Shown here piece by piece: positions 21,101 to 59,844 of a DNA stretch of 64,000 bases. Every line of letters begins with the position of its first letter. Positions within the stretch are counted from its first letter, which is position 1. The position numbers were made by a program, and so were the translations under genes. A model generated the notes under the pieces. The model saw only the letters and a list, made by a program, of their open reading frames with translations, had not been told where the DNA came from and ran no database searches. The stretch spans positions 1 to 64,000 of IMG/VR virus record IMGVR_UViG_3300026292_000003; one strand, 5' to 3'.

Positions 21101-24100
21101 AAGTGTTCCTGTAGCAATACCTGCTATTGAGTTAAAGTCTGTATTACCAAGTGTTAATGATTGTCCTGTAGATGTTATTTTAATTCTGTTTGCATCTGCT
21201 GTAATTGTTACTTCAGTATTGTTTGCAGATGTTAATGCAGATTGTATTTGACTAATAGCTGAATTCATTCTAGTAGTTACATTTACACTACTTGTTGTTG
21301 CTGTATAAGACTCATTTAATCCAACTGTAGTTCTAGCAGTACCTGCAACTGACATTGTTGTGTTAGTACTTGTTAGTTTTAATTGACTATTCTCATCTGA
21401 AGCTGTTACTGAAAATAAGTTTGAAGTATCATTAATTTGAGAAACTATATCAGATAAGTTTAATGCAACAGATTGTTGTTGTACTTCTGTAGGAGGTGCA
21501 GTAACTTTTCCACTTGCTGGAAATCCTAAATCAGTATTAGTAGCACCTGCGGACAATGTTAATGTTTCATTAGGATCTGTTGTTGTAAATGTAAGTTCTA
21601 ATAAGTTTGCAGTAGTAACTATACTTGCTGTTAATCCTGTAATACTTGCATTATTAATTGCGTTCATAATTTCAGTAGTCGTCATTTGATCTGGAATATG
21701 TGTTAGTGTTATTGCTACTGCGGCATTCTGCGTTGGTTGTGCATTAAGAGTTAATACTTGACCATTAATAGTCCAACCAGTTTCAAGTACACCGTCTATA
21801 GTTACACTTGCAACACTATAAGTACTATTTGATAATGCTTGTGATATTGTATAAGCTGTCTTAATGAGAGGTTGATGAGTCAGTGTAATATCAACTGCCT
21901 CACCACCTGTCATTGTTGGATTGTTAATTGTAACAACCTGTCCATTCAGAACATAGTCTGAAGTTGGTACGATGGTACTGTCTACTTCCACTTTAAGAAC
22001 ACTCCAGGTACTCGGACTTAAACTTTGATTAATTGTAAAATCTGTTTGACTTGCTGTAGCTGTATTAGTTTCTGTTATATCAGCTGGTGCAATATTATCT
22101 GCGTTAAATGATTCAGTTACGTCTGCTGGTGTAATATCAAAATTAATTAATGTACCATTAACTGTAATTTGTTTACCAGTTACATCTGCAAAACTAGCAT
22201 TACCAGAAGTAGCTCTCATAACTGCATCACCAGTAACTACTGTAACGTTCTGTGATTTACTAAATCCAATACTTACACCATCAATAATTAATGTCTCACT
22301 TGGTAAGAATGTTGGACTTACTACAGTACCTACTGCTTCTATATCTTGATATTCTGTTGCTGTATCATTAAATGTAACTGTAGTACCTGCAATGTTTGCA
22401 ACTGTTCCATTAGGAAATACTGGGTTAGTTACTGTACCAATCTCTTCTATGTTGGCGGCAACTTCCGTAAGTCCTGTAAAGTTAACACTACATTTCCATA
22501 ACTGTCCTTCATGTCTTACTAGGTCATCTTTCTTATAACTTGTAGTAGAATTCCACGTAGGAATTGTTGCGTATGATTCTGTAGAATCAAAAACATTTAT
22601 TTCAGATGAATTTGATATATAATATTTTGTTTCTGTTGTTAATGTTTCTCCACCAGTTAATATTTCTGATGATGAATCGTCATAGCTTAATGTTTCAAAT
22701 GTTGTTGCTACGTCATTTATAATCTTTTTTGTATCAACTTGAGATAAGTCAATAGATAAAGGTAAGTTTATAATATCACTTGATACTATTTCCATCTCAA
22801 ATGGTTCTTGTAAATTATCATTACCTAATGTTGATTGTCTGAACATATATTGTTCAAATGCTGATAGGCTTGTTGTTCCTCCATCGAGTATAGTTGATCT
22901 ACCAAATCTTTCAATCGCACCTTTGGTACCTTTTTGTTTAATAACACCTTGATGAAAGTTTGTAATAGTATTTTTGTTTAGTCCTAATCCACTTACCCAA
23001 TCTTTATCAATGTTACCTATAGTTAAATCTTTTGATTTAGTAATTGCTGAATTAAATTCATCTACATCAGTTCTATAAATGTCATCAACGGCTTGAACTG
23101 CACTATCAAAGTTTTCAACAATATGATCACCGAACACCAAGTAACCTGGTGCATTCTTTTCACCATTCCATTCTTGTGTACGTTGACCTCTTATTAATAA
23201 TCTTTGTTGTCTTTTATTTTTAACATCGTCATATAAGTCAACACCTAATGCTGTTTTATTTTCAAATATTAATGCGTGTTCAAAATTTGTAGTAGCACTA
23301 GTAATACTTCCAATAAATGCTTGTTCTTTAGTTTCAATAGATACTGTTCCATCTTGTCTGTTTATACTTAAATCGCTATGCTGAATCTTATTACTATACA
23401 TATCAAGTATATTATTGTTATTGTAAATTAATGTGTTATAAGGATATACATATCCACTAGGTGGTGTATACGAAACTCTTCTTCCTATTTGTAATATGTA
23501 AGTATCTTTTTCTTCAGCAGTATTTGTCCAATTAACAAAGTCAGCGGCATTTTGGTCGCCTGCAAATTGTAATGTGTATCCTTTGCTTTCTAAATAGTTC
23601 CAGTAGCCTCTGATGAAATTATACACGTCTTGTATCTTAGAAACTTTAGTATCAAATTCTAATGTGCTAGGTGTTGTTACAAATTTATTATATCTTCTTA
23701 CAGTAGCATTATTAATCGTTTGTAATTCATAGTCATTGCCACCGTTACCTAAATTAGGTTCAAAGAATTTAAATTCTCTTTTATTATCTGATACACCAGA
23801 TACTTTATATGCATCTGCAGTTTTAGTAATAAGTAAAATAGATGCATTAACAAAACTATTAGACTGTCCTTCATACATTGATATATTATAATCACTGCTA
23901 CCAAGTTCAAAGTCACCGTAGTAACTAGTTTCTCCAAATATACTTAAAAGATGTTGACTACTATATCCTTCAAGTTTTTGTAATAGTTTTGTTGTTAAAT
24001 TTTTATATAATTCTTTTTGGTTATTATCTAACTGTTTTCTTTTAAAGTAATTGTGTTGTGCTTGTGATATTCCGTTAGCTACAAATGAAACTTCTTTTAA

Positions 24101-27100
24101 AGATAATTCAATACCAGGTGCTACACTTAAACTAGTACTATAAGAAAGAATTGGTATACCAGTAAAGTGTTTACCTCTGTCTACCATACTCATTGCTGAT
24201 ATTTTTGTAGCTGTTGTTTTAAATCTTGCTGTACCTATTGTACTTTGATTATCGTCTAGTATATAAAACTCTTCTGAGTCTACTAGGTTTGAACTAGTAG
24301 ATACTTTTATTTCATTAACAACTTTATAAGTTTCACCAGGCATAGTAAAACAAGAACTGTTTATATATTTCTTATCATATGATGAAGCATAGTCTCTAAC
24401 TTTTCCTGGTTGGAAATAATCTGACCAAGCTCTAGCTGGATTTAATTTCAACATAGCATTAACAGTCATAGCTTGACCTAATGCAGATTGTCTCCATTCA
24501 ATCTCTACAGGACCCCAATCACCAAACACAAAGTCTTGAGATGCATCAACATTTGTTGGCGTACCTAAAACATTATGTGGACTTTCTAACTGTCCATTAG
24601 GTTTTACAGGACAATTATTTGTAAAGTCCCAATTACGTCTTGCGTATTTTATATCTTGTTTTTTATTTGGATATGCTTGTGGTGCAACTGTACCTACGTT
24701 TAACGCACCTATTAGTGCCGCACGTTTTGTAGCATCTGTCCAACTATAATACGTATCCCACCAAGTAGGTTTAAACGCATAGCCTAGCATATGCCAAGGT
24801 GTTAAGTGTGGCGTAGCAGTACCAAACAACGTCATGTATGCACCTTTATAATGTCCTGGCAGTTTGTTAGTACCAAACTTACCTCCAACACTTAATGAGC
24901 TATAATTCCAAGTAAATGTATCGTTAACATCATAATAGTTTTCAGTATTAAATGATGTCTTTTTATTTTGTATAGCCCACTTCTCATAAAACTTTTCTAA
25001 ATAATTATCAACGGTTGCTAAATCATACCAAGCACTTATATGATGACTTGGCATATAATCAGTAGGAGTTTTATATTTGTCTTTTATAATGCTATCATCT
25101 CTGTACATTAAATCTTGTGTAACTAGTCCAGCATATATTCTTTTTTCTAAATCAAACAATGCCGCGTGTACAGGATCAAAGTTAGCACCACTTACGTTTG
25201 TAATCTGTCCGTTAATTGTATAAGTAGAACCATCGTGTGTATATAATGTTGATCCAACTACTTGAGGTTGCATACCAAAAGCTAGTCCAAGTTTAACCAT
25301 ACTCTGTGGAACAAAGCATTCACTATCCATTTGATTGTAAACTACTTTAAGTATTGGACTTGTATTTAAATTATCAAGTGATGCGTATGTAAGTTTTAAA
25401 TATATAGTATCACCTATAAAATCATAATCAGTATCTTTTAATAATATTCTTTCTACTTGGTTATTGTTACCATCGTTTTCAGTTAGATATACATACAAGT
25501 GATCTCTAATATTTTGATCACCGTGCATATTAAATTTTGTTTTAAAATCATATATTGTAATATTTGATATAGTAAATGTTTCAGTATCATAGCTGTTACT
25601 ATAAACCATATTAGAATCAATATAAAGTTCTGAATCTTTTTTATTTCTAATAACTTCATTAATTGCTGATTCAGTTAAAAGTTTTATACTAGAATTATTT
25701 GCTCCTACTGAATATAATCTTTTAGCCTGTGCTAAAAATCTTTTTCTAAAAGCATACCATTCGTTAGCTTGTTCGTTAAGTGTTGCAGTTATATTTAAAT
25801 TTGTATCTGAGTAGTTTATATCATGCATTATACTAATGTCAGGGTGTATAAACATAGTACCACCATAGTATGGAGTATGTACAATACTAGCATAATTATT
25901 TTCACCAAACATAGTTCCAGAGTAACCTGGATTGACTACAAGTTTATCTAACCAATGATCAATAGTTTCACTCATAGTAAATGTTTTAATACATTCATTA
26001 TTAGCATTATGTTCTAATGTTTCTGGAAAACTAATATTTGTTGTTGGATTAGTTTTATCATTGCTCACCCAGTTAAAGTCAACTAGGTCACCTTTTGTGA
26101 AAGCACTCTCATCTATTACAGTACTTGTAGCACCAACAGTTACTAATGAGTTAGAAACTTTGTTGCCATTTATTGTTACGTCATAAAATAATCTATCCCA
26201 ATTCTCTGAGATTGACATTGAAGCCATTTCATTTGCGTCTGCAAATATACTAAAGTTATCACCGTCACTGTTTGCTCCTGTTACTATTGTAATTTCTGTT
26301 CCGTTTCTAGTAATGGTTATAGCAGGTATTGGATTAGAGCCTGGATTTTCAATATCAACTTGCCCAACTTTAAATGTAATTGTGTAACCTGTTAAGTTAT
26401 TAATTTTAATTGTTTGGTTAACACCTAATAAATGTCTAGTGTTTTTATGTGATTCATTGTAAGTACCGTTGTTGTTACACTTGGCTAATACAAGCATATT
26501 ACCTTTAACTATTACATTATATTCTTCAACTGGTCTCCAATTATCAGTACCAACTGGTATAGTCAATGGCGTATCAGCAATAGTAATCTCATATTGCTTT
26601 TCTTCTCTAGCACTTGTTAATTCTCCCGACGGTCTGTAAAATGTATGTAAGTTATTTTTAATTTTAATATGGTTATAACCTTCTACCATTTTTGAATAAC
26701 TTTGATCTCTAACTGCGTCGTCGTAACTCTTTTTATATTCTTTAGTTAATAAATAATTTTCAAATTCATATTCAGCACCCTTTGGTGTATCTTTGTAACT
26801 TAATATATGTCCAATTTCTGGATCAACAAAAGTACCTGTTCCAACTTTATATCCAAAAATCTTTTCTCCAGCAAATCCTGTGCCGAGGATAGTTTCTAAA
26901 GGAACGCCATAGTAATCATAAAATCTATACAATGGATATTGATTGGTTTTTATTTTTTGTTGAGCTAATGTAATTGTACTATTTGTATAATAAACATCTG
27001 CATAGTTCCAATCTGCGTAAGCTGTACTTGCTACAGATTCAATATTCATTGTATCGTTTTCAGCTAAAGTTTTTACTACTGTAGGTGTTGTTGAAGTTTT

Positions 27101-28606
27101 CTTATAAACTTTAGTATCACTATTATCAACATAAACATAAGTAGATCCTATTGGAAAGTCAGTTAAACTTTCTCCACTAACTACACCATAGTTAACTTTT
27201 CCTATACTGTTTGGAGTAATATGTTTTGCGTGATTCCATAAATCTAATCCAGTATCATATTCTATAATAGGCCTTTGTGCTATTCTATATTCTTTTAAAA
27301 TTTCTGTAAAATCATATGTAGGAATTAGTTCTTCTACTTTATTAATTGTAGCAAAGTTAACCCATCTGTTTCCTCTACTCCAAGCTGTTTGAAATACGTC
27401 TGCTCTGTCAATAACAATGTAATCTTTTTTAGGATAAGGAACACTACCGTGATCCCATTTGTCATTGTCATCATATTGATCTAGTGCATTAATAAGAGCA
27501 AGTTCATCAGCAGTAATACCTGCAACGTTTGCTAGTGTATATACTCCACCACTAAACGTTGCTTCTACTAATTTTTTAATTGAAACATCACCTGTGGTTG
27601 CATCTACTTGAGTAATGTATATAGATTCATTGTCGCCTTGATTTGTATGTATCCAATCACTATTAAACTTTATTAAAGTTCCTGATAAAAACTGTGTAGG
27701 GTTAGACTTAATACCATTAAATTTAAAACCATCAAATATAGGTAATCTATTTGTATCAGCATTGTAAGCATCAATTACTAATTGAGGTGAGAGGTTTCCA
27801 GCATTGTAATAAGTATTATCTATATTTGGAGATACTCTTACTACTTCACTTTTATCCCAAGTACCAGGATTATCTGATGAATGTTTAACAACATTTCCAT
27901 ATACCTTAACACCATTTTCATCTTTATATAATTCTAATTTTGTTTCTGGGTTGGTTGCTGTTACTAGATAAGTTTTATTTTCTATTTCTGCCGCCCAACC
28001 TGTTCCACTAAATTTTATAAGCATTCCAACTTGTAATACAAAAGAATTATTATCGTCAGTTAGTTTATATGCTGGTATACTTTGCATTTCAATTAATGGA
28101 TTTGATGCAACATTTCCATTGTTATTATATGTAGTAACATACTTACTTTCATATACTGGCATCTCTTCTACCCATCTATAGTTTTTGTAGTTTAAAAATT
28201 TATCAACATTAATAGGTGGACTAAAAGTATGTTTACTTGATGAATACGAAGCATTGTAATTATAAGTTTCAAAGTTTTGATTTATTGAATATGCTATATC
28301 ATCAAATGCAATTTTATTAGTTAATTCGTTATTATCTGAATAAGATACAATAGCAGGTTTTAATTGAGTTTTATTTCTAAGGTTAGTATCAATACTAGGA
28401 GTTACATAAGTATCACTTGATACTGAATGCTTTCCATTTTTACTTCCTACGTAACCATTAACTTGGCCTAGAGGTCCTTTAGAAACCATTTGGTCAAGAG
28501 TACTATCTAGCCAACTCTTATTAATGTTTGTTTGAAAAACATTAGGTAAGAAATTACTAGTTTTAATCTTGTTTACCTTATTTGGGCCTGCTTTCTTTTT
28601 AGCCAT
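18107..28606 (-). CDS. giant baseplate wedge/structural protein (3499 aa)
   Basis: Follows gp6; YINEVKPFHTKI wedge motif; WNSTTSYKKDDLVRHEGQLWKC carbohydrate-binding-like module; T/N-rich beta modules. Confidence 0.75.
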   Translation of the reverse strand: MAKKKAGPNKVNKIKTSNFLPNVFQTNINKSWLDSTLDQMVSKGPLGQVNGYVGSKNGKHSVSSDTYVTPSIDTNLRNKTQLKPAIVSYSDNNELTNKIAFDDIAYSINQNFETYNYNASYSSSKHTFSPPINVDKFLNYKNYRWVEEMPVYESKYVTTYNNNGNVASNPLIEMQSIPAYKLTDDNNSFVLQVGMLIKFSGTGWAAEIENKTYLVTATNPETKLELYKDENGVKVYGNVVKHSSDNPGTWDKSEVVRVSPNIDNTYYNAGNLSPQLVIDAYNADTNRLPIFDGFKFNGIKSNPTQFLSGTLIKFNSDWIHTNQGDNESIYITQVDATTGDVSIKKLVEATFSGGVYTLANVAGITADELALINALDQYDDNDKWDHGSVPYPKKDYIVIDRADVFQTAWSRGNRWVNFATINKVEELIPTYDFTEILKEYRIAQRPIIEYDTGLDLWNHAKHITPNSIGKVNYGVVSGESLTDFPIGSTYVYVDNSDTKVYKKTSTTPTVVKTLAENDTMNIESVASTAYADWNYADVYYTNSTITLAQQKIKTNQYPLYRFYDYYGVPLETILGTGFAGEKIFGYKVGTGTFVDPEIGHILSYKDTPKGAEYEFENYLLTKEYKKSYDDAVRDQSYSKMVEGYNHIKIKNNLHTFYRPSGELTSAREEKQYEITIADTPLTIPVGTDNWRPVEEYNVIVKGNMLVLAKCNNNGTYNESHKNTRHLLGVNQTIKINNLTGYTITFKVGQVDIENPGSNPIPAITITRNGTEITIVTGANSDGDNFSIFADANEMASMSISENWDRLFYDVTINGNKVSNSLVTVGATSTVIDESAFTKGDLVDFNWVSNDKTNPTTNISFPETLEHNANNECIKTFTMSETIDHWLDKLVVNPGYSGTMFGENNYASIVHTPYYGGTMFIHPDISIMHDINYSDTNLNITATLNEQANEWYAFRKRFLAQAKRLYSVGANNSSIKLLTESAINEVIRNKKDSELYIDSNMVYSNSYDTETFTISNITIYDFKTKFNMHGDQNIRDHLYVYLTENDGNNNQVERILLKDTDYDFIGDTIYLKLTYASLDNLNTSPILKVVYNQMDSECFVPQSMVKLGLAFGMQPQVVGSTLYTHDGSTYTINGQITNVSGANFDPVHAALFDLEKRIYAGLVTQDLMYRDDSIIKDKYKTPTDYMPSHHISAWYDLATVDNYLEKFYEKWAIQNKKTSFNTENYYDVNDTFTWNYSSLSVGGKFGTNKLPGHYKGAYMTLFGTATPHLTPWHMLGYAFKPTWWDTYYSWTDATKRAALIGALNVGTVAPQAYPNKKQDIKYARRNWDFTNNCPVKPNGQLESPHNVLGTPTNVDASQDFVFGDWGPVEIEWRQSALGQAMTVNAMLKLNPARAWSDYFQPGKVRDYASSYDKKYINSSCFTMPGETYKVVNEIKVSTSSNLVDSEEFYILDDNQSTIGTARFKTTATKISAMSMVDRGKHFTGIPILSYSTSLSVAPGIELSLKEVSFVANGISQAQHNYFKRKQLDNNQKELYKNLTTKLLQKLEGYSSQHLLSIFGETSYYGDFELGSSDYNISMYEGQSNSFVNASILLITKTADAYKVSGVSDNKREFKFFEPNLGNGGNDYELQTINNATVRRYNKFVTTPSTLEFDTKVSKIQDVYNFIRGYWNYLESKGYTLQFAGDQNAADFVNWTNTAEEKDTYILQIGRRVSYTPPSGYVYPYNTLIYNNNNILDMYSNKIQHSDLSINRQDGTVSIETKEQAFIGSITSATTNFEHALIFENKTALGVDLYDDVKNKRQQRLLIRGQRTQEWNGEKNAPGYLVFGDHIVENFDSAVQAVDDIYRTDVDEFNSAITKSKDLTIGNIDKDWVSGLGLNKNTITNFHQGVIKQKGTKGAIERFGRSTILDGGTTSLSAFEQYMFRQSTLGNDNLQEPFEMEIVSSDIINLPLSIDLSQVDTKKIINDVATTFETLSYDDSSSEILTGGETLTTETKYYISNSSEINVFDSTESYATIPTWNSTTSYKKDDLVRHEGQLWKCSVNFTGLTEVAANIEEIGTVTNPVFPNGTVANIAGTTVTFNDTATEYQDIEAVGTVVSPTFLPSETLIIDGVSIGFSKSQNVTVVTGDAVMRATSGNASFADVTGKQITVNGTLINFDITPADVTESFNADNIAPADITETNTATASQTDFTINQSLSPSTWSVLKVEVDSTIVPTSDYVLNGQVVTINNPTMTGGEAVDITLTHQPLIKTAYTISQALSNSTYSVASVTIDGVLETGWTINGQVLTLNAQPTQNAAVAITLTHIPDQMTTTEIMNAINNASITGLTASIVTTANLLELTFTTTDPNETLTLSAGATNTDLGFPASGKVTAPPTEVQQQSVALNLSDIVSQINDTSNLFSVTASDENSQLKLTSTNTTMSVAGTARTTVGLNESYTATTSSVNVTTRMNSAISQIQSALTSANNTEVTITADANRIKITSTGQSLTLGNTDFNSIAGIATGTLEAAEGTVQNTFDINQFGGAPVDPSLDPATFNILITDDSDFEISDVEGINTKFFGYNVLQVIQNHSPLYSKSVDGTHCGICAGTATSDGNDAEVTTNIDHGLQVGDFVMLLNTTTTPNIDGIHKVTKLGTGSNAGRIFYIDEFIKECGNAVSIMPLVTTRFANHTQRDSALTKSHWNLPTGTLVVSSNNGTINGTFVSTTDAVGLTTVRQTIARPSNADVDSIIIYNHKTNQTKVQLEAYDPMRKIIPGIAEQNLDYSGVNDNAIYNLSTDTNRFIEDDNAWGEEQVGTRWWDTSKVRYYDYDQGSISYKKDMWGKLYPGSEIVVWEWIKSTVAPDDYAESVTSQKEMFGVTATGEAYSVYDATARETLYYYSQEQEYNSNTGTYTDVFYYWVKNKTTINGTRTLSAFDVANIIENPTANGISWFAVLDNETFIIDNVSYYVEDTSTVLQINLVGDKFKSHNEWTLITKDLDTIPEYYIEGMKYNLAGWDKSLRKIPHQTLHRFNKYGDELSIGQTWFNNLTTARRNAIITINKLLEDINLHDEYKDSWNKTLLANSFPRYLWNWKDYTLNTYLGTLNYTATVTDTDKLETDIDKDFHSVVQLPIYDSALKLDRSEIYYYNSDTAKWILVHKKNSTVRFDVDLLSPSDGFDMTPWDSKGWDHTFVSEYWQVLIEALKKDIFVEYHKLKMNKLFFSIVDYTLSSFAQTNWIRKTTYVKIEVDSQIDTTSRTFKKDNLVNAIGYINEVKPFHTKISAVKTNYKVIDETSITVTDTPTHVITLNTQDFTPTFNGTTYVGADSTDIVTGGDFTSTPADTIEAINFLSPYNFNVNADEKRNSFVNIDPLELLRINVQTNATGNTYANTSRTFTHIQDAAGNVKAYALLDAKKSTLTSAIDEDSTDLAIASTTAFDDTGFVYVGGEIIEYAKTDATTLKIMKRAVGQTFIVSADTGDAVVQISNYQLTFANDTVSYNQTGSSLLSTPVSETAQELQDFGKGIEL

Positions 28607-52866: not shown

Positions 52867-53505
52867 ATGCTTAACTCAAGTACATTAAAAGAAAATCTTT
52901 CGTATGATCAGGCTCAAATCATTACTGAAACTTCTCAGGATGGTAAGAACCTGTTCATGCAAGGTATTTTTGTACAAGGTGATAAACGTAATCAAAATCA
53001 AAGAGTTTATCCAGTAAACGAAATAAGTAAAGCTGTTAAAGCGATACAAGAAAAAATCGAATCTGGATTCTCAGTATTAGGTGAAGCAGATCACCCAGAC
53101 GATCTGCAAGTAAATTTAGACCGTGTTAGTCACATGATTGAAAAAATGTGGATGGACGGTCAAGACGGTTATGGTCGTTTAAAACTGTTGCCTACTCCAA
53201 TGGGAAATATTTGTAAAACCCTTTTAGAGAATGGAGTAAAACTTGGTGTTTCATCAAGAGGTAGTGGTAATGTAACAGAAAGCGGCAATGTTAGCGATTT
53301 TGAAATACAAACAGTTGATATTGTTGCAAATCCAAGTGCACCAGATGCTTATCCAGACCCATTATACGAACAAATAATGAATGGTAAGCGAGGTAACGTA
53401 TTAATGGATGTTGCATCCGCAGTAAACAACGACAAAATAGCTGAACAGTACTTCCAGAAGGAAGTACAAAAGTTCATTGAAAAACTAGATATTAGGAGAA
53501 AGTAA
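52867..53505 (+). CDS. gp21: prohead core protease gp21
   Basis: NQNQRVYP, LGEADHP, LGVSSRGSG, DIVANPSAPDAYP. Confidence 0.95.
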   Translation: MLNSSTLKENLSYDQAQIITETSQDGKNLFMQGIFVQGDKRNQNQRVYPVNEISKAVKAIQEKIESGFSVLGEADHPDDLQVNLDRVSHMIEKMWMDGQDGYGRLKLLPTPMGNICKTLLENGVKLGVSSRGSGNVTESGNVSDFEIQTVDIVANPSAPDAYPDPLYEQIMNGKRGNVLMDVASAVNNDKIAEQYFQKEVQKFIEKLDIRRK

Positions 53506-54608
53506 TGGCTAAAAATGCAATAGAACAACTCCTAGGTTCAGAAGTTATATCAGAGGAAGTGAGAAATACACTTTCAGAGGCGTGGGAATCAAAGCTGAAA
53601 GAAGCTCGTGAAGAGTTAACTGCAGAGCTTCGTGAAGAATTCGCTAACAGATATGAAACTGATAAAACGCAAATGGTGGAAGCACTAGATGCTATGGTAT
53701 CAGATACAATCAAATCAGAGTTAGAAGAATTCAAAGCGGACAAACAAGCGGCAGTTAAAGCTCAAGTTGAGTACAAAGCTAAGATTGCAGAACACGCAGA
53801 TCTTTTAGATAAGTTCGTTATGGAAACTTTGAAAAAAGAAATCGCTGAGTTACGTAATGATAGAAAAGTTCAAGAAGGAAACTTTGAGAAACTTGAAGAT
53901 TTCGTTATGGAACAACTTACTTCGGAACTTAATGAATTCCATAAAGACAAGAAAGACCTAATTGAACAGAAGGTAAAACTTGTTAAAGAAGGTAAAGAAA
54001 TAATTGCAAAAGCTAAAACTGAATTCGTAGATAAGGCTTCTTCTAAACTAGCAGGTATTGTTGAGAATACACTAACAACAGAACTTGGTACATTAAAAGA
54101 AGATATTAAAACTGCAAAAGAAAATATGTTTGGAAGAAAACTATTTGAAACATTTGCGGCTGAATTTATGGGTTCTCATTTAGCAGAAGGAACACATATT
54201 TCAAAACTTTCAAAAGAACTTTCTGAAGCTAAAGCGGCAGTTGAAGCTTCTAAAGAAGAAATTGCTGATAGAGAGACAAAGGTTAAAGAAGCAAACACAA
54301 AAATTGCTAGAATTAACGAGAGTCGTGAACGTGAGGCGGTGCTAACTGACCTTATGGGACCTCTATCAAAAGATAAACGTGAACTAATGACTAACTTACT
54401 TGAATCAACAGAAACAGGCAAGTTAAAAGCACAATTCAACAAATACCTACCAACGGTATTAAACGAAGGTGCGCCTAAGTCAAAAACTTCACAAACAATA
54501 ACGGAATCTCAGAAGACTGAGATTACAGGTAACAAGGCTCACACACAGTCAACTGAAAGTGAAGCCGAAATTATTAACCTTAAAAAGTTAGCAGGAATAT
54601 CAAATTAA
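53505..54608 (+). CDS. gp22: prohead scaffold protein gp22-like
   Basis: Coiled coil between protease and major capsid; GRKLFETFAAEF. Confidence 0.85.
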   Translation: MAKNAIEQLLGSEVISEEVRNTLSEAWESKLKEAREELTAELREEFANRYETDKTQMVEALDAMVSDTIKSELEEFKADKQAAVKAQVEYKAKIAEHADLLDKFVMETLKKEIAELRNDRKVQEGNFEKLEDFVMEQLTSELNEFHKDKKDLIEQKVKLVKEGKEIIAKAKTEFVDKASSKLAGIVENTLTTELGTLKEDIKTAKENMFGRKLFETFAAEFMGSHLAEGTHISKLSKELSEAKAAVEASKEEIADRETKVKEANTKIARINESREREAVLTDLMGPLSKDKRELMTNLLESTETGKLKAQFNKYLPTVLNEGAPKSKTSQTITESQKTEITGNKAHTQSTESEAEIINLKKLAGISN

Positions 54609-54623
54609 TAAGGAGAATTCCAA

Positions 54624-55787
54624 ATGACACAGAATCTATTTGAAAATTGGGATGCTACAAAAGGCGCCCTAACAGATGGCTTAGAAGGTAACAAGAAGGT
54701 TGTAATGGAATCAGTTCTTGAAAATACTAAGAGCTACCTTTCAGAATCAGCTAATTCTGGTACAACAATGGCAGGTAACGTTGCTTCACTTAACAAAGTG
54801 ATTCTACCAGTTATCCGTCGTGTGATGCCAACAGTTATCGCAAACGAACTAGTAGGTGTACAACCTATGACAGGTCCAGTAGGACAAATCCACACATTAA
54901 GAGTAAGATATGGTCAAACAGCGGCAGGTGTTGCGGCTGGTGACGAAGCACTATCACCATTTGCTATTGCAAAAGGTTACTCTGGTGACGCATCAACAGG
55001 TGGTCCAACTTCAACTTCTTCTTTAGAAGCAGAAGCTGGTAGAAAACTATCAATTCAAGTTTTAAAACAAACTGTTGAAGCAAAAACACGTAAACTATCT
55101 GCACGTTGGACATTTGAAGCGGCACAAGATGCTAATTCAATGCACGGTTTAGATGTAGAAGCTGAAATTATGCAGGCTTTAGCTCAAGAAATTACAGCTG
55201 AAATCGACCAAGAAGTTTTAACTTCTCTACGTACTCTAGCAGGTGCGGCTACTGATACATACGATCAAGCAAACGTATCAGGTCAAGCTACATTCGTTGG
55301 AGACCAACACGCGGCACTAGCAGTTCTAATTAACAGAGCGGCTAACCTAATCGCTACAAGAACAAGACGTGGCGCAGGTAACTACGTTGTTGTTTCACCA
55401 ACAATGTTAACAGTACTACAATCAGCGACAACTTCAGCGTTCGCAAGAACAACTGAAGGTCCTTTCGAAGCTCCAACAAACACTAAATTCGTTGGTACTC
55501 TAAACGGTACAATGAGAGTGTTCGTTGACCAGTACGCGGCAGACGATGCTCCAGTACTAGTTGGCTACAAAGGCGACGGTGAGATTGATGCGGCGGCATT
55601 CTATTGTCCATACATCCCACTAATGTCATCAGGTACAGTACTTGATCCAGCAACATTCGAACCAACAGTATCTTTCATGACAAGATACGGTTATGTAGAG
55701 CTAAACAACCAAGCTTCATCTCTTGGTAATGCGGCTGACTACCTAGCTAAAATTGGTGTTACAGCTGGTAACCTATCATTCTCATAA
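54624..55787 (+). CDS. gp23: major capsid protein gp23
   Basis: GVQPMTGPVGQI, AKTRKLSARWTFEAAQD, EITAEID, FYCPYIPL, FMTRYG. Confidence 0.97.
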   Translation: MTQNLFENWDATKGALTDGLEGNKKVVMESVLENTKSYLSESANSGTTMAGNVASLNKVILPVIRRVMPTVIANELVGVQPMTGPVGQIHTLRVRYGQTAAGVAAGDEALSPFAIAKGYSGDASTGGPTSTSSLEAEAGRKLSIQVLKQTVEAKTRKLSARWTFEAAQDANSMHGLDVEAEIMQALAQEITAEIDQEVLTSLRTLAGAATDTYDQANVSGQATFVGDQHAALAVLINRAANLIATRTRRGAGNYVVVSPTMLTVLQSATTSAFARTTEGPFEAPTNTKFVGTLNGTMRVFVDQYAADDAPVLVGYKGDGEIDAAAFYCPYIPLMSSGTVLDPATFEPTVSFMTRYGYVELNNQASSLGNAADYLAKIGVTAGNLSFS

Positions 55788-55810
55788 TCCGAGAATATAG
55801 AAGATATATT

Positions 55811-55840
55811 AAAAGGGCGGCTTTATGTCGCCCTTTTTTT
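55811..55840 (+). terminator. intrinsic terminator after gp23
   Basis: AAAGGGCGGC-TTTAT-GTCGCCCTTTTTTT. Confidence 0.9.
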
Positions 55841-55939
55841 ATGACCTAATTACAGGTTGTAAAAAAATTTAAAAAAATATTGACAAGATACGTTACCGTG
55901 TAGTATATTAAAACAATATATGACAAAGGGAGGGCACTA

Positions 55940-56902
55940 ATGGGTGACTTAACTATTTGGATGGGACTAGGATTCTTATTAGCGGCCTATTCAGTTATCG
56001 CAAACGATTCAGTACAAACTCTTGGTACGTGGATTGCATCAAACCACGAAAGATTTCATTGGAAAACATTATGGTTTTCTGCTTCGGCAGTTTTACTTTG
56101 GGCCTTATGGTATGGCTGGACAGTGAATGGAGGAGATATATCATACGGGCGACTTAATAGAATTCCGTGGCAGGAAGTAAAGTGGTATCATGCAATGGCA
56201 CCTGCATTACTTTTATTGCTAACAAGAGTTGGTGTACCAGTTAGTACATCATTTTTAGTATTATCAGCATTTGCTAGTACATTTGTATTAGAAAAAATGT
56301 TAATGAAATCTATTATGGGTTATGCAGTCGCGGCTGTGGCGGCGTATGTTATTTGGATTATTATTACAAAAATTGTTGATGAAATAAACGATCCTGTAAA
56401 AGAAAAACATAAACCATATTGGCGAGTAGCACAATGGGTAACTACTGGTTTCTTATGGTGGACTTGGCTATCACATGACATGGCAAACATTGCCGTATTC
56501 CTACCAAGACAAGTAAACTTTGAATTAATGGTAATGATTAGTTTGGTGTTTGTTATCGGATTAGGATTTATGTTCCGTGAAAGCGGAGGTAAGATACAAA
56601 AGATAGTATTAGAAAAACACAATACAAAGTATGTTCGATCAGCAACACTTATTGATTTATTTTATTGGCTGATACTTTGGTTCTTTAAAGAACTAAACGA
56701 TATTCCAATGTCAACAACTTGGGTGTTTGTTGGATTACTATGTGGACGTGAACTTGCAATGGCTACAATGCTAGGCAAGGGAAAACTAAAAGTAGTATTT
56801 CCATTAATTGGAAAAGATTTTATTAAAATGATAACAGGGTTGTTAGCATCTATTGGAATTGTACTAACAATACATTATATTTTAATTCCAAACGGATTCT
56901 AA
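55940..56902 (+). CDS. PiT/PHO4-like inorganic phosphate transporter-related membrane protein
   Basis: Many TM helices; ANDSVQ and HDMAN signature-like repeats; PVSTS and PMSTT motifs; own sigma70 promoter at 55880. Confidence 0.65.
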   Translation: MGDLTIWMGLGFLLAAYSVIANDSVQTLGTWIASNHERFHWKTLWFSASAVLLWALWYGWTVNGGDISYGRLNRIPWQEVKWYHAMAPALLLLLTRVGVPVSTSFLVLSAFASTFVLEKMLMKSIMGYAVAAVAAYVIWIIITKIVDEINDPVKEKHKPYWRVAQWVTTGFLWWTWLSHDMANIAVFLPRQVNFELMVMISLVFVIGLGFMFRESGGKIQKIVLEKHNTKYVRSATLIDLFYWLILWFFKELNDIPMSTTWVFVGLLCGRELAMATMLGKGKLKVVFPLIGKDFIKMITGLLASIGIVLTIHYILIPNGF

Positions 56903-56950
56903 AAAAACTTGACAAGCTGATTAACGTGTAGTACTATCAAAGTATAGTTA

Positions 56951-57025
56951 ATCAGCTTGGTGCTAATGGTAACATAGCGGTCTCCAAAACCGAAGACGAG
57001 GGTTCGATTCCTTCAGCTGGTGCCA
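56951..57025 (+). tRNA. trnW: tRNA-Trp (anticodon CCA)
   Basis: Acceptor ATCAGCT/AGCTGGT, anticodon loop CTCCAAA, GGTTCGATTCC T arm, encoded CCA end. Confidence 0.92.
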
Positions 57026-57039
57026 ATTTAGGAAGTTAT

Positions 57040-57234
57040 ATGGATCCTGATAATCCTGATTATAAAGAATGTTGCAGACTGTTTTATATGCTTAAAGGAC
57101 ATCTGAATACATCTCCAGACACAATTCGTAGTTCATATAATGGTTACTTCAAACGTCTATGGTATAATAATGAAGCATACTTAAAAGAAGAAGGCTTCGA
57201 AGAAGCATATAAAAAACATTTAGAAAATATATAA
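57040..57234 (+). CDS. hypothetical protein
   Basis: AGGA RBS; 64-aa ORF. Confidence 0.7.
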   Translation: MDPDNPDYKECCRLFYMLKGHLNTSPDTIRSSYNGYFKRLWYNNEAYLKEEGFEEAYKKHLENI

Positions 57235-57246
57235 TAAATATATAAA

Positions 57247-58152
57247 ATGTTTAGAGGAAAATACACACAAACACACAGTCATTTCTATATGCTTTCCGAT
57301 ACTCACAGAGTAAACGGATTTATTAATGCAATTAGAGAAAGAGTTTGTGTTGGCGATATTGTTGTTGATTTAGGTGCAGGTACAGGTATACTAGGTATTG
57401 AATGTGCTAAAGCAGGTGCAGATACAGTACATTTAGTAGAACAAGAACCTAAACTAATTCCAGTAATAGAAGCAATGATAAAAGAACACGGTGTTGAAGA
57501 ACAATGTGTTATACATAATAAAAGATCAGATGAATTTATAAAAGAGTTTAAGGGGCAAGTTAATCTAATAGTTTGTGAAGGTATTGGAGATCATATATTT
57601 GAAAGCAGACTAATAAAAGATTTTTTAGAATTCAAAGATAAACACAACATAGATAGTATTCCAGAAGATTTTAGACTTTACGTACATCATACACCTGTAA
57701 AAATAAACAGAGAATTACTTGGCAAGTATCATACAGTACTAGACAAGTTAGAAAAACCAACACTAGATTCTGTTAATATAACAAATAATATTATACATGA
57801 TAGGTTATACAAGTTTGGAAATAAAATAACTGAAGCAAAATGTATTTTAGAGTTTAATTCATTAGATCAACTTAAAACACGTTGTGAACAGATTTCATTA
57901 AACAGAATGCCAGATGATGATGAATATTTAATTCTATATTTTGAAATTGACTTAATAGATAAAATAAATATTAGTAATAAACCTACAAGAGAAGATTTAC
58001 CACATAGCTATTACCAAAGATTAATTAGCTGTAAAGATATAAGATCTCAGAATATACAAATAAAAATTGATTATGAAAAACACGTTACAGGAATCGAAGA
58101 CGAGCCCTTTCCAAATATAGAGATAAAACCAAGCAATGTCCAAATTTTATAA
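57247..58152 (+). CDS. SAM-dependent methyltransferase, protein-arginine methyltransferase (PRMT)-like
   Basis: HxxMLxDxxR; VVDLGAGTGILG..AKAGA..V..VE; double-E loop CEGIGDHIFES. Confidence 0.75.
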   Translation: MFRGKYTQTHSHFYMLSDTHRVNGFINAIRERVCVGDIVVDLGAGTGILGIECAKAGADTVHLVEQEPKLIPVIEAMIKEHGVEEQCVIHNKRSDEFIKEFKGQVNLIVCEGIGDHIFESRLIKDFLEFKDKHNIDSIPEDFRLYVHHTPVKINRELLGKYHTVLDKLEKPTLDSVNITNNIIHDRLYKFGNKITEAKCILEFNSLDQLKTRCEQISLNRMPDDDEYLILYFEIDLIDKINISNKPTREDLPHSYYQRLISCKDIRSQNIQIKIDYEKHVTGIEDEPFPNIEIKPSNVQIL

Positions 58153-59116
58153 CGAAGATTTATACGAGTCAATAGAACATCCAGACTTTTTTAATGCAGA
58201 ACAATTACTCTTTATTAAAAATGGTTATAAAAGTTTATATAACGATGTAATAAAAGATATAGAATATAACGATGATACTGAGTATGTAAGAATTGAAGAA
58301 GCGAACTTTACAAGATCACCAATTAATAAAAGATTAAATTGGGGACAAATTGGAGCATCGGTTCGTGATAAAGAATCGCATGATAGCAAAAGATTTAAAC
58401 AATTATCTTTTCAAAGAAACAAACCAGGCTTTGAGTTTGTTGACAACTTAAATGAATGGACTAGTACCATTGTTAGTATAATGGAAAAAAGATTTGAAGA
58501 AATAGGAAGACCTGCAAAAGTTATGGATATTGCATTTCATAATTTTAGTCAAGGTTTACGAATACATTGTGATGGACAAGATATTTTAACTGAACTAAAA
58601 AATTCAGTTCCAAGACCAGCACATCATCCAAATTATGCAATAGAAGAATATGCACCAAAAGAAGGTGGAACAAAACACGCCCATCAAGGATTAGTTAATT
58701 TAGATGCACAACCAGGAAAAGCAACAATTATTTTTGATCAATGGTTTCCATACAGTACATATTATGATATTACAAATGATTTAGATAATTTAGATGAAGC
58801 AAAAAGACCAGTTATAACATTTGCCAAAGGTGATGATTTTGAAATGTTTGGTGAGCATATAAGAGAGCTAACAGGTAAACCTTTTAACAGGCGTACTTGG
58901 ATGCAACTAATCGCACCAGAATTTCATTTACAATTTCCACCAGAAATGTTTCATGGATTGACACTTAATAAAGTATTAGATTTTGGGGAACCAGGACAAT
59001 TAATATCTTGGGATAATAAACGATACCATATGGCAAAACCTTTTATGTTATGGGGAAACCATGGTATAGGACAAGAAGATAGACTAATGTTACAATACGA
59101 AAGTTTATGTTTGTAG
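58136..59116 (+). CDS. 2OG-Fe(II) oxygenase-like protein
   Basis: IHCD (HxD) ... GQLISWD..RYH ... DRLML (distal His and Arg). Confidence 0.6.
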   Translation: MSKFYNEDLYESIEHPDFFNAEQLLFIKNGYKSLYNDVIKDIEYNDDTEYVRIEEANFTRSPINKRLNWGQIGASVRDKESHDSKRFKQLSFQRNKPGFEFVDNLNEWTSTIVSIMEKRFEEIGRPAKVMDIAFHNFSQGLRIHCDGQDILTELKNSVPRPAHHPNYAIEEYAPKEGGTKHAHQGLVNLDAQPGKATIIFDQWFPYSTYYDITNDLDNLDEAKRPVITFAKGDDFEMFGEHIRELTGKPFNRRTWMQLIAPEFHLQFPPEMFHGLTLNKVLDFGEPGQLISWDNKRYHMAKPFMLWGNHGIGQEDRLMLQYESLCL

Positions 59117-59152
59117 TTAAATAAGGTAAATAATTTAGTAAATAATAGTACA

Positions 59153-59204
59153 ATCGTTCATCCTGTAGATTTCGGACGGAAGTAAGCGAAAGCTGAAGGA
59201 ACGC
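59153..59204 (+). ncRNA. glutamine riboswitch (glnA motif) aptamer 1
   Basis: AUCGUUCA-UCC..GGA-CGGAAGUA-AGC GAAA GCU-GAAGGAACGC matches the glnA three-way junction with E-loop. Confidence 0.85.
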
Positions 59205-59210
59205 ATTATC

Positions 59211-59259
59211 ATCGTTCATCTCGTAAGAGACGGAAGTAGGTAATGAACCGAAGGAACGC
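59211..59259 (+). ncRNA. glutamine riboswitch (glnA motif) aptamer 2
   Basis: AUCGUUCA-UCUC GUAA GAGA-CGGAAGUA-GGU..ACC-GAAGGAACGC. Confidence 0.85.
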
Positions 59260-59284
59260 ACTTAACTGTAAAAAGGAGAGTGTC

Positions 59285-59437
59285 ATGAATCACAGAGACT
59301 TTGAAATCGCTCGTAAAAAGAAGCGAACTGAAGAGGCACACAAAGCAATACATAGAAAGCAAATGGAAAGACCGCTATCTAGACCTCGTGCTGAGAAGAA
59401 CATCTTAAGCTCAGACCCTAAAATGCAAAAAATCTAA
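59285..59437 (+). CDS. small basic protein (50 aa) downstream of the tandem glutamine riboswitch
   Basis: AAGGAGAG RBS and ATG 59285; MNHRDFEIARKKKRTEEAHKAIHRKQMERPLSRPRAEKNILSSDPKMQKI. Confidence 0.75.
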   Translation: MNHRDFEIARKKKRTEEAHKAIHRKQMERPLSRPRAEKNILSSDPKMQKI

Positions 59438-59456: not shown

Positions 59457-59485
59457 TTGACCTTTAGGTAAAGTTAGTATATATT
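59457..59485 (+). promoter_or_regulatory. sigma70 promoter for the ncRNA
   Basis: TTGACC-17nt-TATATT. Confidence 0.7.
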
Positions 59486-59490
59486 ATAGA

Positions 59491-59708
59491 TAATACCAAC
59501 AGCGGATTGATCATCCAATGTTAATAGTGCAAGGAAGAGGCGTTTACCAGAGCGTCGAACTTGACTGTAAAGAGGTGGTACTCAGGCATGGTTGCAGAAA
59601 TGCGTTGTGTCACATCGCTCTACCGAGCGGTTGCAGGTTCCCTGGGTTAGAAATGGTATCTAGTCGAGGGGTTGAGGGTGTACCCAAGTCCCTCCTATTT
59701 TGGTATTA
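59491..59708 (+). ncRNA. ~220-nt structured ncRNA, manA-motif-like
   Basis: Promoter, paired ends TAATACCAA/TTGGTATTA, internal stems and terminator; GTGCAAGGAA..AGAGGTGGTRCTC..CTCTACC blocks recall the marine phage manA RNA (from memory). Confidence 0.65.
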
Positions 59709-59713
59709 GTATT

Positions 59714-59741
59714 AAAACCCACATTAATTGTGGGTTTTTTT
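59714..59741 (+). terminator. intrinsic terminator
   Basis: AAAACCCACA-TTAAT-TGTGGGTTTTTTT. Confidence 0.85.
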
Positions 59742-59844
59742 ATGGCCATACGTTAAAACGCAATCTAACATAGCAAAATGCATAAATACATATATAATTT
59801 TAACTAATTAAAATATGGAAGTAGAAAAATAGGAACAGTATATT

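What the first reader, a model, noticed from the sequence alone, without database searches (positions are those of the whole stretch)
57247..59116. PRMT-like methyltransferase overlapping a 2OG-Fe(II) oxygenase: possible protein modification writer/eraser pair
Seen: the methyltransferase has PRMT-specific features beyond the SAM motif: N-terminal HxxMLxDxxR helix, double-E loop (E-GIGDHIF-E), and a C-terminal segment ending PHSYYQ where PRMTs have THWxQ. Its end overlaps the start of an HxD...H...R oxygenase gene. Known: PRMTs are chiefly eukaryotic, and 2OG oxygenases include demethylases and hydroxylases. Inference: a phage module that methylates and then demethylates or hydroxylates Arg in a host or virion protein. 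The R/K-rich 50-aa peptide downstream is a possible substrate.
Basis: partly seen in the sequence, partly recalled or inferred. Interest (0 to 1): 0.6.

Follow-up and report, generated by a model that had tools for sequence, protein, structure and literature searches.

The report
Phage PRMT-fold methyltransferase plus 2OG oxygenase
A marine jumbo phage carries a tightly coupled gene pair, a methyltransferase with the two-domain fold of eukaryotic protein arginine methyltransferases and a very divergent iron/2-oxoglutarate oxygenase, which most likely decorate the same peptide or protein together rather than writing and erasing a mark.

Summary
Its model matches only PRMTs over its full length (Z 16-22.7, 260-280 residues), and PrmA and other Rossmann-only enzymes follow at Z about 10. 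ORF2 (58136-59116) matches no Pfam, PHROG, NCBIfam or PDB sequence. Its confident model matches only Fe(II)/2OG oxygenases (Z 9-12), and H144-x-D146, H298 and R316 are kept across a family down to 22% identity. The two genes overlap or abut in this order in about ten divergent viral lineages. They are under purifying selection and are absent from 50,697 GenBank phage records.

ORF2 resembles prolyl-hydroxylase/AlkB types, not JmjC enzymes. It often occurs without the methyltransferase, and it is co-expressed with it, so an eraser role is unlikely. In divergent relatives the pair sits inside radical-SAM/SPASM arrays. The methyltransferase's nearest non-phage relatives include one in a lasso-peptide cluster. 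This points to joint peptide/protein tailoring.

The R/K-rich peptide is a separate unit behind two tandem glutamine riboswitches and is missing in some relatives that keep the pair. The substrate remains unknown.

The parts
56909..56937 (+). sigma-70-like promoter (TTGACA, 17 nt, TACTAT) ahead of tRNA-Trp, the small ORF, ORF1 and ORF2; probable operon start
   Evidence: 10 of 12 matches. It resembles the promoter-like site at 55880-55909. Consensus match only; the total number of such sites in the region is not above chance.
56951..57025 (+). tRNA-Trp (CCA)
   Evidence: ARAGORN; Rfam tRNA 45.8 bits.
57040..57234 (+). 64-aa ORF of unknown function directly upstream of ORF1
   Evidence: Conserved at 70-87% in close relatives L004-6 and L011-13. 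Absent from a related contig that joins the tRNA to ORF1 (joint 57028/57246).
57247..58152 (+). ORF1, 301 aa: PRMT-fold SAM-dependent methyltransferase (Rossmann domain about 1-135, beta-barrel about 136-300)
   Evidence: PRMTs are the best PDB sequence hits; model pLDDT 87; PRMTs Z 16-22.7 over residues 4-300; invariant motifs.
58136..58152 (+). 17-nt overlap of the ORF1 stop region with the ORF2 start (translational coupling)
   Evidence: Overlaps or near-abutment are also seen in L001, L004, L007, L012 and L016-21.
58136..59116 (+). ORF2, 326 aa: divergent Fe(II)/2-oxoglutarate oxygenase (H144-x-D146, H298, R316)
   Evidence: conserved residues; model pLDDT 92; only 2OG oxygenases match, Z 9.3-12.1; no curated family match.
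59153..59262 (+). two tandem glutamine riboswitch aptamers (glnA RNA, RF01739); a separate regulatory unit, not part of the enzyme pair
   Evidence: 61.4 and 65.7 bits, gathering score 35.
59285..59437 (+). R/K-rich 50-aa ORF (64 aa if started at 59243, which lies inside the second aptamer), with an AAGGAG-like site 6-12 nt upstream; riboswitch-controlled small basic protein
   Evidence: Kept in L011-14 but replaced by an unrelated 79-aa ORF in L004/L005, which keep the enzyme pair. No DUF4278 or other family hit.

Best explanation
ORF1 and ORF2 form a two-enzyme tailoring module and are made together from one transcript. ORF1 is a reduced PRMT-type enzyme. It binds SAM through the GAGTG loop, E65 and R21. 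It holds a guanidinium (arginine side chain) between the two invariant glutamates E111 and E119, under the HSYYQ loop that stands where PRMTs have THW, and it transfers a methyl group to a guanidino nitrogen. ORF2 binds Fe(II) through H144, D146 and H298 and binds 2-oxoglutarate through R316, and it hydroxylates (or otherwise oxidises) the same substrate. The substrate is most likely a ribosomally made peptide or protein. It may be a phage product that is also processed by the phage's radical-SAM/SPASM enzymes, or a host protein. The two marks would be installed together, not written and then erased. Shown: the folds, the catalytic residues, the conserved gene pairing, purifying selection and the genomic contexts. 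Inferred: arginine as the acceptor, the oxygenase chemistry, action on a shared substrate, and the identity of that substrate.
For: PRMT fold over both domains with a clear gap to all other methyltransferases. PRMT-specific motifs align to PRMT9, PRMT3 and CARM1 and are invariant in the family. ORF2 has a 2OG-oxygenase fold and a conserved HxD...H...R set. The order ORF1 then ORF2, overlapping or abutting, is found in the window group, L014, L001, L007, L016-18/L020, L019, L021 and L024, at 28-79% ORF1 identity. dN/dS is 0.18-0.31. The pair sits inside same-strand arrays of 7-9 radical-SAM genes in L001 and L007. A radical-SAM gene overlaps the ORF1 homologue's start in L024, and radical-SAM genes flank ORF2 homologues in L009 and L015. 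The window's own genome has at least 10 radical-SAM genes. Among the nearest non-phage relatives of ORF1, those that carry PRMT_C, P0027 lies in a lasso-peptide cluster: PqqD, transglutaminase-like protease, 50-aa ORF, Asn-synthase-like cyclase. The literature reports bacterial PRMT-like peptide methylases in operons with peptide dioxygenases (PMC3417536). Fragments of both genes occur in metatranscriptome libraries (this is weak evidence because DNA carry-over is possible).
Against: No substrate, precursor peptide or recognition domain was identified. The genome has no RGG/GAR-rich protein. In the window the pair lies 46 kb from the radical-SAM cluster, between the capsid gene and tail-fibre-like genes. 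About half of the lineages have no radical-SAM gene within 10 kb, and these phages are rich in such genes anyway, so some adjacency could be background. The double-E loop is one residue shorter than canonical, and THW is replaced. Sequence profiles do not carry homology through the barrel against bacterial PRMT-like proteins. The model was built from an alignment that included those proteins. The complex prediction gave no verdict.
Confidence: 0.5

Rival explanations
1. Host-takeover enzymes: the pair modifies host proteins early in infection, for example translation factors or ribosomal proteins, by arginine methylation plus prolyl or other hydroxylation, to reprogramme the cell.
For: A sigma-70-like promoter lies ahead of the tRNA-Trp/ORF1/ORF2 unit, and a terminator after the capsid gene separates the unit from the late genes. 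Structural neighbours of ORF2 include the EF-Tu prolyl hydroxylase 4iw3 and the ribosomal-protein hydroxylases Tpa1 and OGFOD1. The island's synonymous divergence is 3-5 times that of the flanking capsid genes, as expected for exchangeable accessory genes.
Against: The promoter sites are consensus matches, and their number is not above chance. The structural neighbours are tied within 1-2 Z units with many unrelated 2OG oxygenases. This reading does not explain the embedding in radical-SAM arrays. It overlaps with the best explanation and differs only in the target.
Confidence: 0.2
2. Small-molecule pathway: ORF1 methylates free arginine or another guanidino metabolite and ORF2 oxidises the product, as in SznE-type arginine N-methylation followed by oxidation in natural-product pathways, or as part of nitrogen metabolism.
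For: Free-arginine N-methyltransferases exist and are used in small-molecule clusters (SznE, as cited in PMC12637814). Neighbours in some loci include glycosyltransferases and a carbamoyltransferase. The island also carries glutamine riboswitches, and ORF2 uses 2-oxoglutarate; both are nitrogen-status metabolites.
Against: The full PRMT barrel, which in PRMTs shapes a peptide-binding groove, is retained. The nearest relatives with known context are peptide-linked. Whether SznE has the PRMT fold was not tested here.
Confidence: 0.15
3. Writer/eraser pair: ORF1 methylates arginine and ORF2 removes the methyl group by oxidative demethylation.
For: AlkB-type oxidative N-demethylases are among ORF2's structural neighbours. 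The gene pairing is conserved.
Against: Overlapping, co-translated genes would run a futile cycle. No JmjC enzyme, the class to which reported arginine demethylases belong, is among the top 50 exhaustive structural matches. ORF2 homologues occur without ORF1, in tandem copies or fused to another domain, so they do not depend on ORF1's mark.
Confidence: 0.07
4. The two genes are independent accessory genes kept adjacent by shared regulation only, with unrelated substrates.
For: ORF2 homologues often occur without ORF1. The complex prediction gave no support (this is not evidence against binding).
Against: The same order and tight spacing persist down to 28-30% ORF1 identity across about ten lineages whose flanking genes differ.
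Confidence: 0.08

Closest known systems
Eukaryotic type I PRMTs (PRMT1, PRMT3, PRMT6, CARM1) and PRMT7/9
   Same: Two-domain architecture of Rossmann domain plus beta-barrel (Z 20-22.7, 260-280 residues aligned). N-terminal HxxMLxDxxR helix, motif I, an acidic residue after strand 2, and a double-E loop. Met15 stands at the position of PRMT1 Met48, which from my own knowledge is typical of type I enzymes.
   Different: Only 301 aa and 15-21% identity. The double-E loop is one residue shorter. HSYYQ replaces THW. The arm region is reduced to one helix (155-167 in the model). The Pfam PRMT_C model does not match. It is phage-encoded, and its substrate is unknown.
Bacterial PRMT-like peptide methylases of secondary-metabolite and RiPP clusters (Aravind and colleagues, PMC3417536; P0027 in a lasso-peptide cluster)
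   Same: These are the nearest non-phage sequence relatives (30-39% identity over the Rossmann half; hhalign probability 99.7%). They show an operon logic of methylase plus other peptide-modifying enzymes, including dioxygenases according to the paper.
   Different: They keep THWKQ and a Pfam-detectable PRMT_C domain and carry extra C-terminal domains (SEC-C or a roughly 90-aa extension). The phage family lacks these and pairs with a phage-specific oxygenase.
PrmA (ribosomal protein L11 methyltransferase)
   Same: Class I Rossmann core. PrmA is among the best Pfam hits for ORF1 (E 2.6e-6, behind Cons_hypoth95 at 5.9e-7).
   Different: The structural match covers only the Rossmann half (3grz Z 10.1 over 135 residues; 1ufk Z 9.2 over 117) against Z above 20 for PRMTs. 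PDB sequence E-value is 8e-4 against 7e-10 for PRMT9.
Prolyl-hydroxylase/AlkB-like Fe(II)/2OG oxygenases (6n1f, PHD2, PPHD-EF-Tu 4iw3, vCPH, AlkB, AviO1)
   Same: Double-stranded beta-helix core, HxD...H iron triad, and an arginine in the last core strand for 2OG.
   Different: Only 150-190 of 326 residues align, at 7-15% identity. There is a 150-residue spacing between HxD and the distal His, with large inserts. No curated family model matches. Relatives are almost all viral.
SznE/SznF-type arginine methylation followed by oxidation (streptozotocin pathway)
   Same: The same logic of N-methylation of an arginine guanidine followed by oxygenase chemistry (for SznE; the SznF step is from my own knowledge).
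   Different: It acts on free arginine, and the oxidase is not a 2OG enzyme. No sequence or fold comparison with SznE could be made here.

Membership tests
PRMT family (protein arginine N-methyltransferases) | Class I Rossmann SAM-binding domain with motif I (GxGxG) and an acidic residue after strand 2 | tested here: met
   VDLGAGTGILG at residues 39-50 and E65, invariant in the family. Aligned to the same motifs of PRMT9, PRMT3 and CARM1.
PRMT family (protein arginine N-methyltransferases) | N-terminal helix motif HxxMLxDxxR that covers SAM and contributes to the arginine pocket | tested here: met
   H12...M15-L16...D18...R21 aligns column for column with PRMT9 and PRMT3. D18 and R21 are invariant even when the distant bacterial relatives are included.
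PRMT family (protein arginine N-methyltransferases) | Double-E loop: two glutamates that clamp the substrate guanidinium | tested here: met
   E111 and E119, with the whole loop invariant. The profile alignment to PRMT3 pairs both glutamates using a one-residue gap, so the loop is one residue shorter than canonical.
PRMT family (protein arginine N-methyltransferases) | THW loop in the barrel | tested here: inconclusive
   The sequence is not THW. An invariant H253-S-Y-Y-Q257 follows the strand that aligns with the PRMT3 strand preceding its THW loop. No residue-level structural superposition was available.
PRMT family (protein arginine N-methyltransferases) | C-terminal beta-barrel domain fused to the Rossmann domain | tested here: met
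   Fifteen PRMT chains at Z 16-22.7 cover residues 4-300, and the next hits drop to Z 10 on the Rossmann half only. Foldseek's top 50 are all PRMTs. Caveats: Pfam PRMT_C does not match, hhalign stops at residue 151, and the model's alignment contained PRMT-like sequences.
PRMT family (protein arginine N-methyltransferases) | Head-to-tail homodimer through a dimerisation arm | not tested
   The model shows a single helix at 155-167 where the arm would be. No homodimer prediction was run.
PRMT family (protein arginine N-methyltransferases) | Methylation of arginine guanidino nitrogen | not testable with these tools
   Needs an enzyme assay with mass spectrometry.
Fe(II)/2-oxoglutarate-dependent oxygenase superfamily | Double-stranded beta-helix core | tested here: met
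   Model pLDDT 92. All 50 best exhaustive matches are 2OG oxygenases, Z 9.3-12.1, and the Foldseek list agrees.
Fe(II)/2-oxoglutarate-dependent oxygenase superfamily | HxD/E...H iron-binding triad and a basic residue for the 2OG C5 carboxylate | tested here: met
   H144, D146 and H298 are at least 90% conserved and R316 is invariant in 35 sequences. One member, P0073, has lost them. Their spatial clustering in the model could not be inspected.
Fe(II)/2-oxoglutarate-dependent oxygenase superfamily | Match to a curated family model | tested here: not met
   No Pfam, PHROG, NCBIfam or PDB sequence hit. A profile search of 1.84 billion representatives found only 30 proteins, all of ORF2's own family.
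JmjC-type arginine demethylases/hydroxylases (the eraser reading) | JmjC cupin as the closest structural class | tested here: not met
   No JmjC chain is among the top 50 exhaustive matches. JMJD5 and FIH appear only as weak Foldseek hits, TM 0.25-0.29.
Glutamine-synthetase inactivating factors IF7/IF17 (for the R/K-rich peptide) | Glutamine riboswitch in the leader, and a DUF4278 domain in the protein | tested here: inconclusive
   The riboswitch feature is met (two aptamers). DUF4278 was not detected at E up to 0.1, and NCBIfam gave no hit. Analogy drawn from PMC6212724.
RiPP tailoring system | Precursor peptide and recognition element next to the modifying enzymes | tested here: inconclusive
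   Radical-SAM/SPASM neighbours are present in five lineages. No conserved precursor or PqqD-like element was identified. The 64-aa ORF upstream of ORF1 is confined to close relatives.

The most novel reading that the evidence does not exclude
A family of bacteriophage-encoded, true protein arginine methyltransferases, working with a new phage-specific 2OG hydroxylase family, installs methyl-arginine plus hydroxyl marks on host or virion proteins or on radical-SAM-matured peptides. That would be the first PRMT-type arginine methylation system described in a bacterial virus.
Probability: 0.35. Interest if true: 0.75.

Novelty: new variant of a known kind. Interest (0 to 1): 0.6.

Why it matters
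PRMT-type arginine methylation is regarded as a eukaryotic regulatory system, with only computationally predicted bacterial cousins in peptide-antibiotic clusters. A compact, conserved phage version paired with an unclassified 2OG oxygenase gives a small enzyme pair that can be expressed and tested. It allows three questions to be asked: whether arginine methylation operates in phage-bacterium biology, what the many radical-SAM genes of marine jumbo phages are for, and how the PRMT fold evolved. It also defines a phage-specific 2OG-oxygenase family that has no curated model.

Tried and rejected
1. Complex prediction of ORF1 with ORF2: ipSAE 0.00 and no verdict, so it is not used for or against binding.
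2. ORF2 against Pfam, PHROGs, NCBIfam and PDB sequences: no hit.
3. Exhaustive profile search with the ORF2 family: only its own family was found, with no bridge to a named family.
4. Both proteins by tblastn against GenBank phage records: no match.
5. ORF2 patterns in 185,579 species genomes: the first call failed for lack of a conserved pattern and the second found no relative. Sensitivity is limited to close patterns.
6. hhalign of the phage methyltransferase family against bacterial PRMT-like proteins: aligned only residues 7-151, so barrel homology rests on the fold model and on the PRMT3 profile alignment.
7. The protein downstream of the lasso-cluster PRMT-like gene as an ORF2 analogue: rejected, because it is HPr-kinase-like.
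8. Search for RGG/GAR-rich candidate substrates in the 221-kb genome: none found.
9. T4 late-promoter motif TATAAATA: under-represented and absent near the pair.
10. Literature searches for phage or bacterial PRMTs: no paper describing a phage PRMT.
11. Reads: only contigs of RNA libraries were available. They show presence but not transcription, strand or transcript ends.
Full report
**What is there.**
- The window is the first 64 kb of a 221,643-bp viral record, estimated 60% complete. GC content is about 33%.
- Its Gp23-type capsid protein is 67-70% identical to those of jumbo myoviruses: PA5oct, Vibrio phage 2.275.O and Sinorhizobium phage Phosso.
- The stretch occurs in seawater metagenomes of 14 studies.
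- They follow a terminator after the capsid gene, a permease-like membrane protein, a sigma-70-like promoter, tRNA-Trp and a 64-aa ORF.

**ORF1 is a PRMT-fold methyltransferase.**
- Pfam gives only generic hits: Cons_hypoth95, PrmA and MTS.
- Against PDB sequences the best matches are PRMT9 (7e-10), PRMT6, CARM1 and PRMT1. PrmA scores 8e-4.
- A profile built from the phage family alone raises the PRMT matches to 1e-18 to 1e-11. It aligns to PRMT3 from residue 6 to residue 250.
- In these alignments H12..M15-L16..D18..R21, motif I, and both glutamates of E111-GIGDHIF-E119 pair with the PRMT motifs. The loop is one residue shorter than in PRMTs.
- All of these residues, the N-terminal M-F-x-G-x-Y-T and H253-SYYQ-RL are invariant in the family.
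- The AlphaFold model has pLDDT 87 and pTM 0.86. In Foldseek it matches only PRMTs among the top 50, over about 300 columns at TM 0.62-0.69.
- In the exhaustive search, 15 PRMT chains score Z 16-22.7 with 260-280 residues aligned over positions 4-300. The next hit is PrmA at Z 10.1 over 135 residues.
- Caveats: Pfam PRMT_C does not match. hhalign against bacterial PRMT-like proteins stops at residue 151. THW is replaced by HSYYQ. The model's alignment included PRMT-like sequences.

**ORF2 is a divergent 2OG oxygenase.**
- It has no Pfam, PHROG, NCBIfam or PDB sequence hit.
- A profile search of 1.84 billion representatives found 30 proteins, all of its own family.
- In a 35-sequence alignment reaching 22% identity, H144, D146 and H298 are at least 90% conserved and R316 is invariant.
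- The model has pLDDT 92. Foldseek hits are all 2OG oxygenases but weak.
- The exhaustive search gives 50 of 50 2OG oxygenases at Z 9.3-12.1 over 150-190 residues. They are led by prolyl-hydroxylase-like, AviO1/EvdO and AlkB types, and none is a JmjC enzyme.
- Look-alike clusters in the ESM Atlas are viral hypothetical proteins, followed by AlkB.

**The pair is conserved.**
- Profiles of both families were searched against every locus fetched.
- ORF1 lies immediately upstream of ORF2, overlapping or abutting, in the window group (L004-6, L011-13), L014, L001, L007, L016-18/L020, L019 (cut), L021 and L024. ORF1 identity falls as low as 28-30%.
- ORF2 homologues also occur without ORF1: alone (L015, L027, L028), duplicated (L022, L023, L025/26), or fused to an unknown 265-aa N-terminal domain (P0058, L009).
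- dN/dS is 0.18-0.31 for ORF1 and 0.21-0.30 for ORF2, against 0.02-0.06 for the capsid gene.
- Their dS (0.48-0.90) is 3-5 times that of the flanking capsid and scaffold genes in the same genome pairs. The island therefore has a separate, mosaic history.
- Neither protein has a match in 50,697 GenBank phage records. BFVD holds one or two uncharacterised full-length look-alikes from uncultured phages.

**Context and likely role.**
- In L001 and L007 the pair is embedded in same-strand arrays of 7-9 radical-SAM genes.
- In L024 a radical-SAM gene overlaps the start of the ORF1 homologue. In L009 and L015 radical-SAM/SPASM genes flank ORF2 homologues.
- Radical_SAM is the commonest Pfam family among 75 neighbouring ORFs of the other loci.
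- The window has four radical-SAM genes, two of them with SPASM domains, at 6272-11297. The whole record has at least ten.
- The nearest non-phage relatives of ORF1 carry PRMT_C. One of them, P0027, lies in a lasso-peptide cluster. Another, of the SEC-C type, lies among redox enzymes.
- Aravind and colleagues wrote that the bacterial sister groups of PRMTs are peptide methylases in secondary-metabolite operons that also encode peptide dioxygenases (PMC3417536).
- Taken together, I read the pair as co-acting tailoring enzymes for a peptide or protein.
- The target is not identified. No RGG-rich protein exists in the genome, and no precursor peptide was found.
- A host-protein target and a small guanidino metabolite remain open as rivals. 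The second follows the precedent of SznE.

**Why not writer/eraser, and why not the downstream peptide.**
- Coupled translation of a writer and its eraser would be futile.
- ORF2 is not of the JmjC class, and it is frequently found without ORF1.
- The R/K-rich ORF is preceded by two tandem glutamine riboswitch aptamers (61 and 66 bits against a gathering score of 35). An AAGGAG-like site precedes the ATG at 59285.
- This layout resembles riboswitch-controlled gifB-type small proteins (PMC6212724), and glutamine riboswitches are known from marine phages (PMC9004378). However, DUF4278 is not detected.
- In L004/L005 this segment is replaced by an unrelated 79-aa ORF while the enzyme pair is kept.

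**Expression.** Only contigs of RNA libraries were available. One library holds near-identical pieces of ORF2 (58525-59148). Another holds a 92%-identical relative of ORF1 joined directly to the tRNA. This shows presence in RNA libraries, not proof of transcription. The complex prediction gave no verdict.

**Verdict.** The PRMT-like and 2OG-oxygenase assignments are well supported at the level of fold and motifs. The functional reading should change from writer/eraser to joint tailoring, with the substrate unknown. It is a new phage-borne variant of the bacterial PRMT-like methylase plus dioxygenase theme, together with a 2OG-oxygenase family that has no curated model.

Noticed in passing
window 59153-59262 and 59285-59437: Two tandem glutamine riboswitch aptamers (RF01739, 61.4 and 65.7 bits) lie directly ahead of a 50-aa R/K-rich ORF. 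The layout resembles riboswitch-controlled gifB-type small proteins, but no DUF4278 match was found. The whole 728-nt spacer is 96.7% identical to L011-13, although ORF2 next to it is only 78% identical at protein level.
   Followed up: partly
window 59457-59740: A sigma-70-like promoter (59457-59485) is followed by a manA RNA motif (RF01745, 59505-59704, 49.3 bits, below the gathering score of 55.2, E 1e-10) and then a hairpin with a T-run that looks like a terminator, at about 59716-59745 (read by eye; the terminator scan did not list it). This part is kept at 93% in L005, where the riboswitch part is replaced.
   Followed up: partly
window 55940-56902: A 320-aa multi-pass membrane protein has its own TTGACA/TATATT promoter-like site. 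It has no Pfam hit, but its language-model look-alikes are named phosphate/sulfate permease family (score 0.99; a PHO4-bearing cluster scores 0.89). A 66%-identical copy lies 4 kb from the ORF2 homologue in L015.
   Followed up: partly
window 6272-11297 (minus strand) and G000 170-209 kb: Four adjacent radical-SAM genes, two of them with SPASM domains, are flanked by six unannotated ORFs of 290-340 aa. The 221-kb record has at least ten radical-SAM genes, an unusual load for a phage. Relatives L001 and L007 carry 7-9 in a row.
   Followed up: partly
window 53505-59116 compared with L004 and L012: Synonymous divergence of ORF1 and ORF2 (dS 0.48-0.90) is 3-5 times that of the neighbouring capsid and scaffold genes (0.14-0.22) between the same genomes. 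The accessory island is mosaic and has been exchanged among otherwise near-identical phages.
   Followed up: yes
P0058 / L009 8001-9815: A 604-aa protein fuses an unknown 265-aa N-terminal domain (no Pfam hit) to an ORF2-type oxygenase domain. It sits directly upstream of four radical-SAM/SPASM genes.
   Followed up: partly
L029 1718-7081: A bacterial PRMT_C-bearing methyltransferase (P0027) lies inside a lasso-peptide-type cluster: PqqD, transglutaminase-like protease, 50-aa ORF, Asn-synthase-like cyclase and an HPr-kinase-like protein. This suggests arginine methylation as a lasso-peptide tailoring step.
   Followed up: partly
G000:C1:155189-155473 (outside the window): A 95-aa arginine-rich ORF looks by eye like ribosomal protein S21, which is reported in pelagiphages and OM43 phages (PMC9004378). 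This may hint at a streamlined marine heterotroph as host. It was not tested with a family search.
   Followed up: no
G000:C1:142963-143127 (outside the window): There is a weak second match (E 2e-6) of the ORF2 family profile to the C-terminal part of a 244-aa ORF, possibly a further divergent oxygenase paralogue.
   Followed up: no
window 18107-28606 (minus strand): A 3499-aa ORF is followed by a 1033-aa ORF, presumably giant structural or fibre proteins. They were not examined.
   Followed up: no
window 57028-57246: A contig from an RNA library of a 92%-identical relative joins the tRNA-Trp end directly to the ORF1 start with 16 other letters. The 64-aa ORF is therefore dispensable in that relative.
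   Followed up: partly
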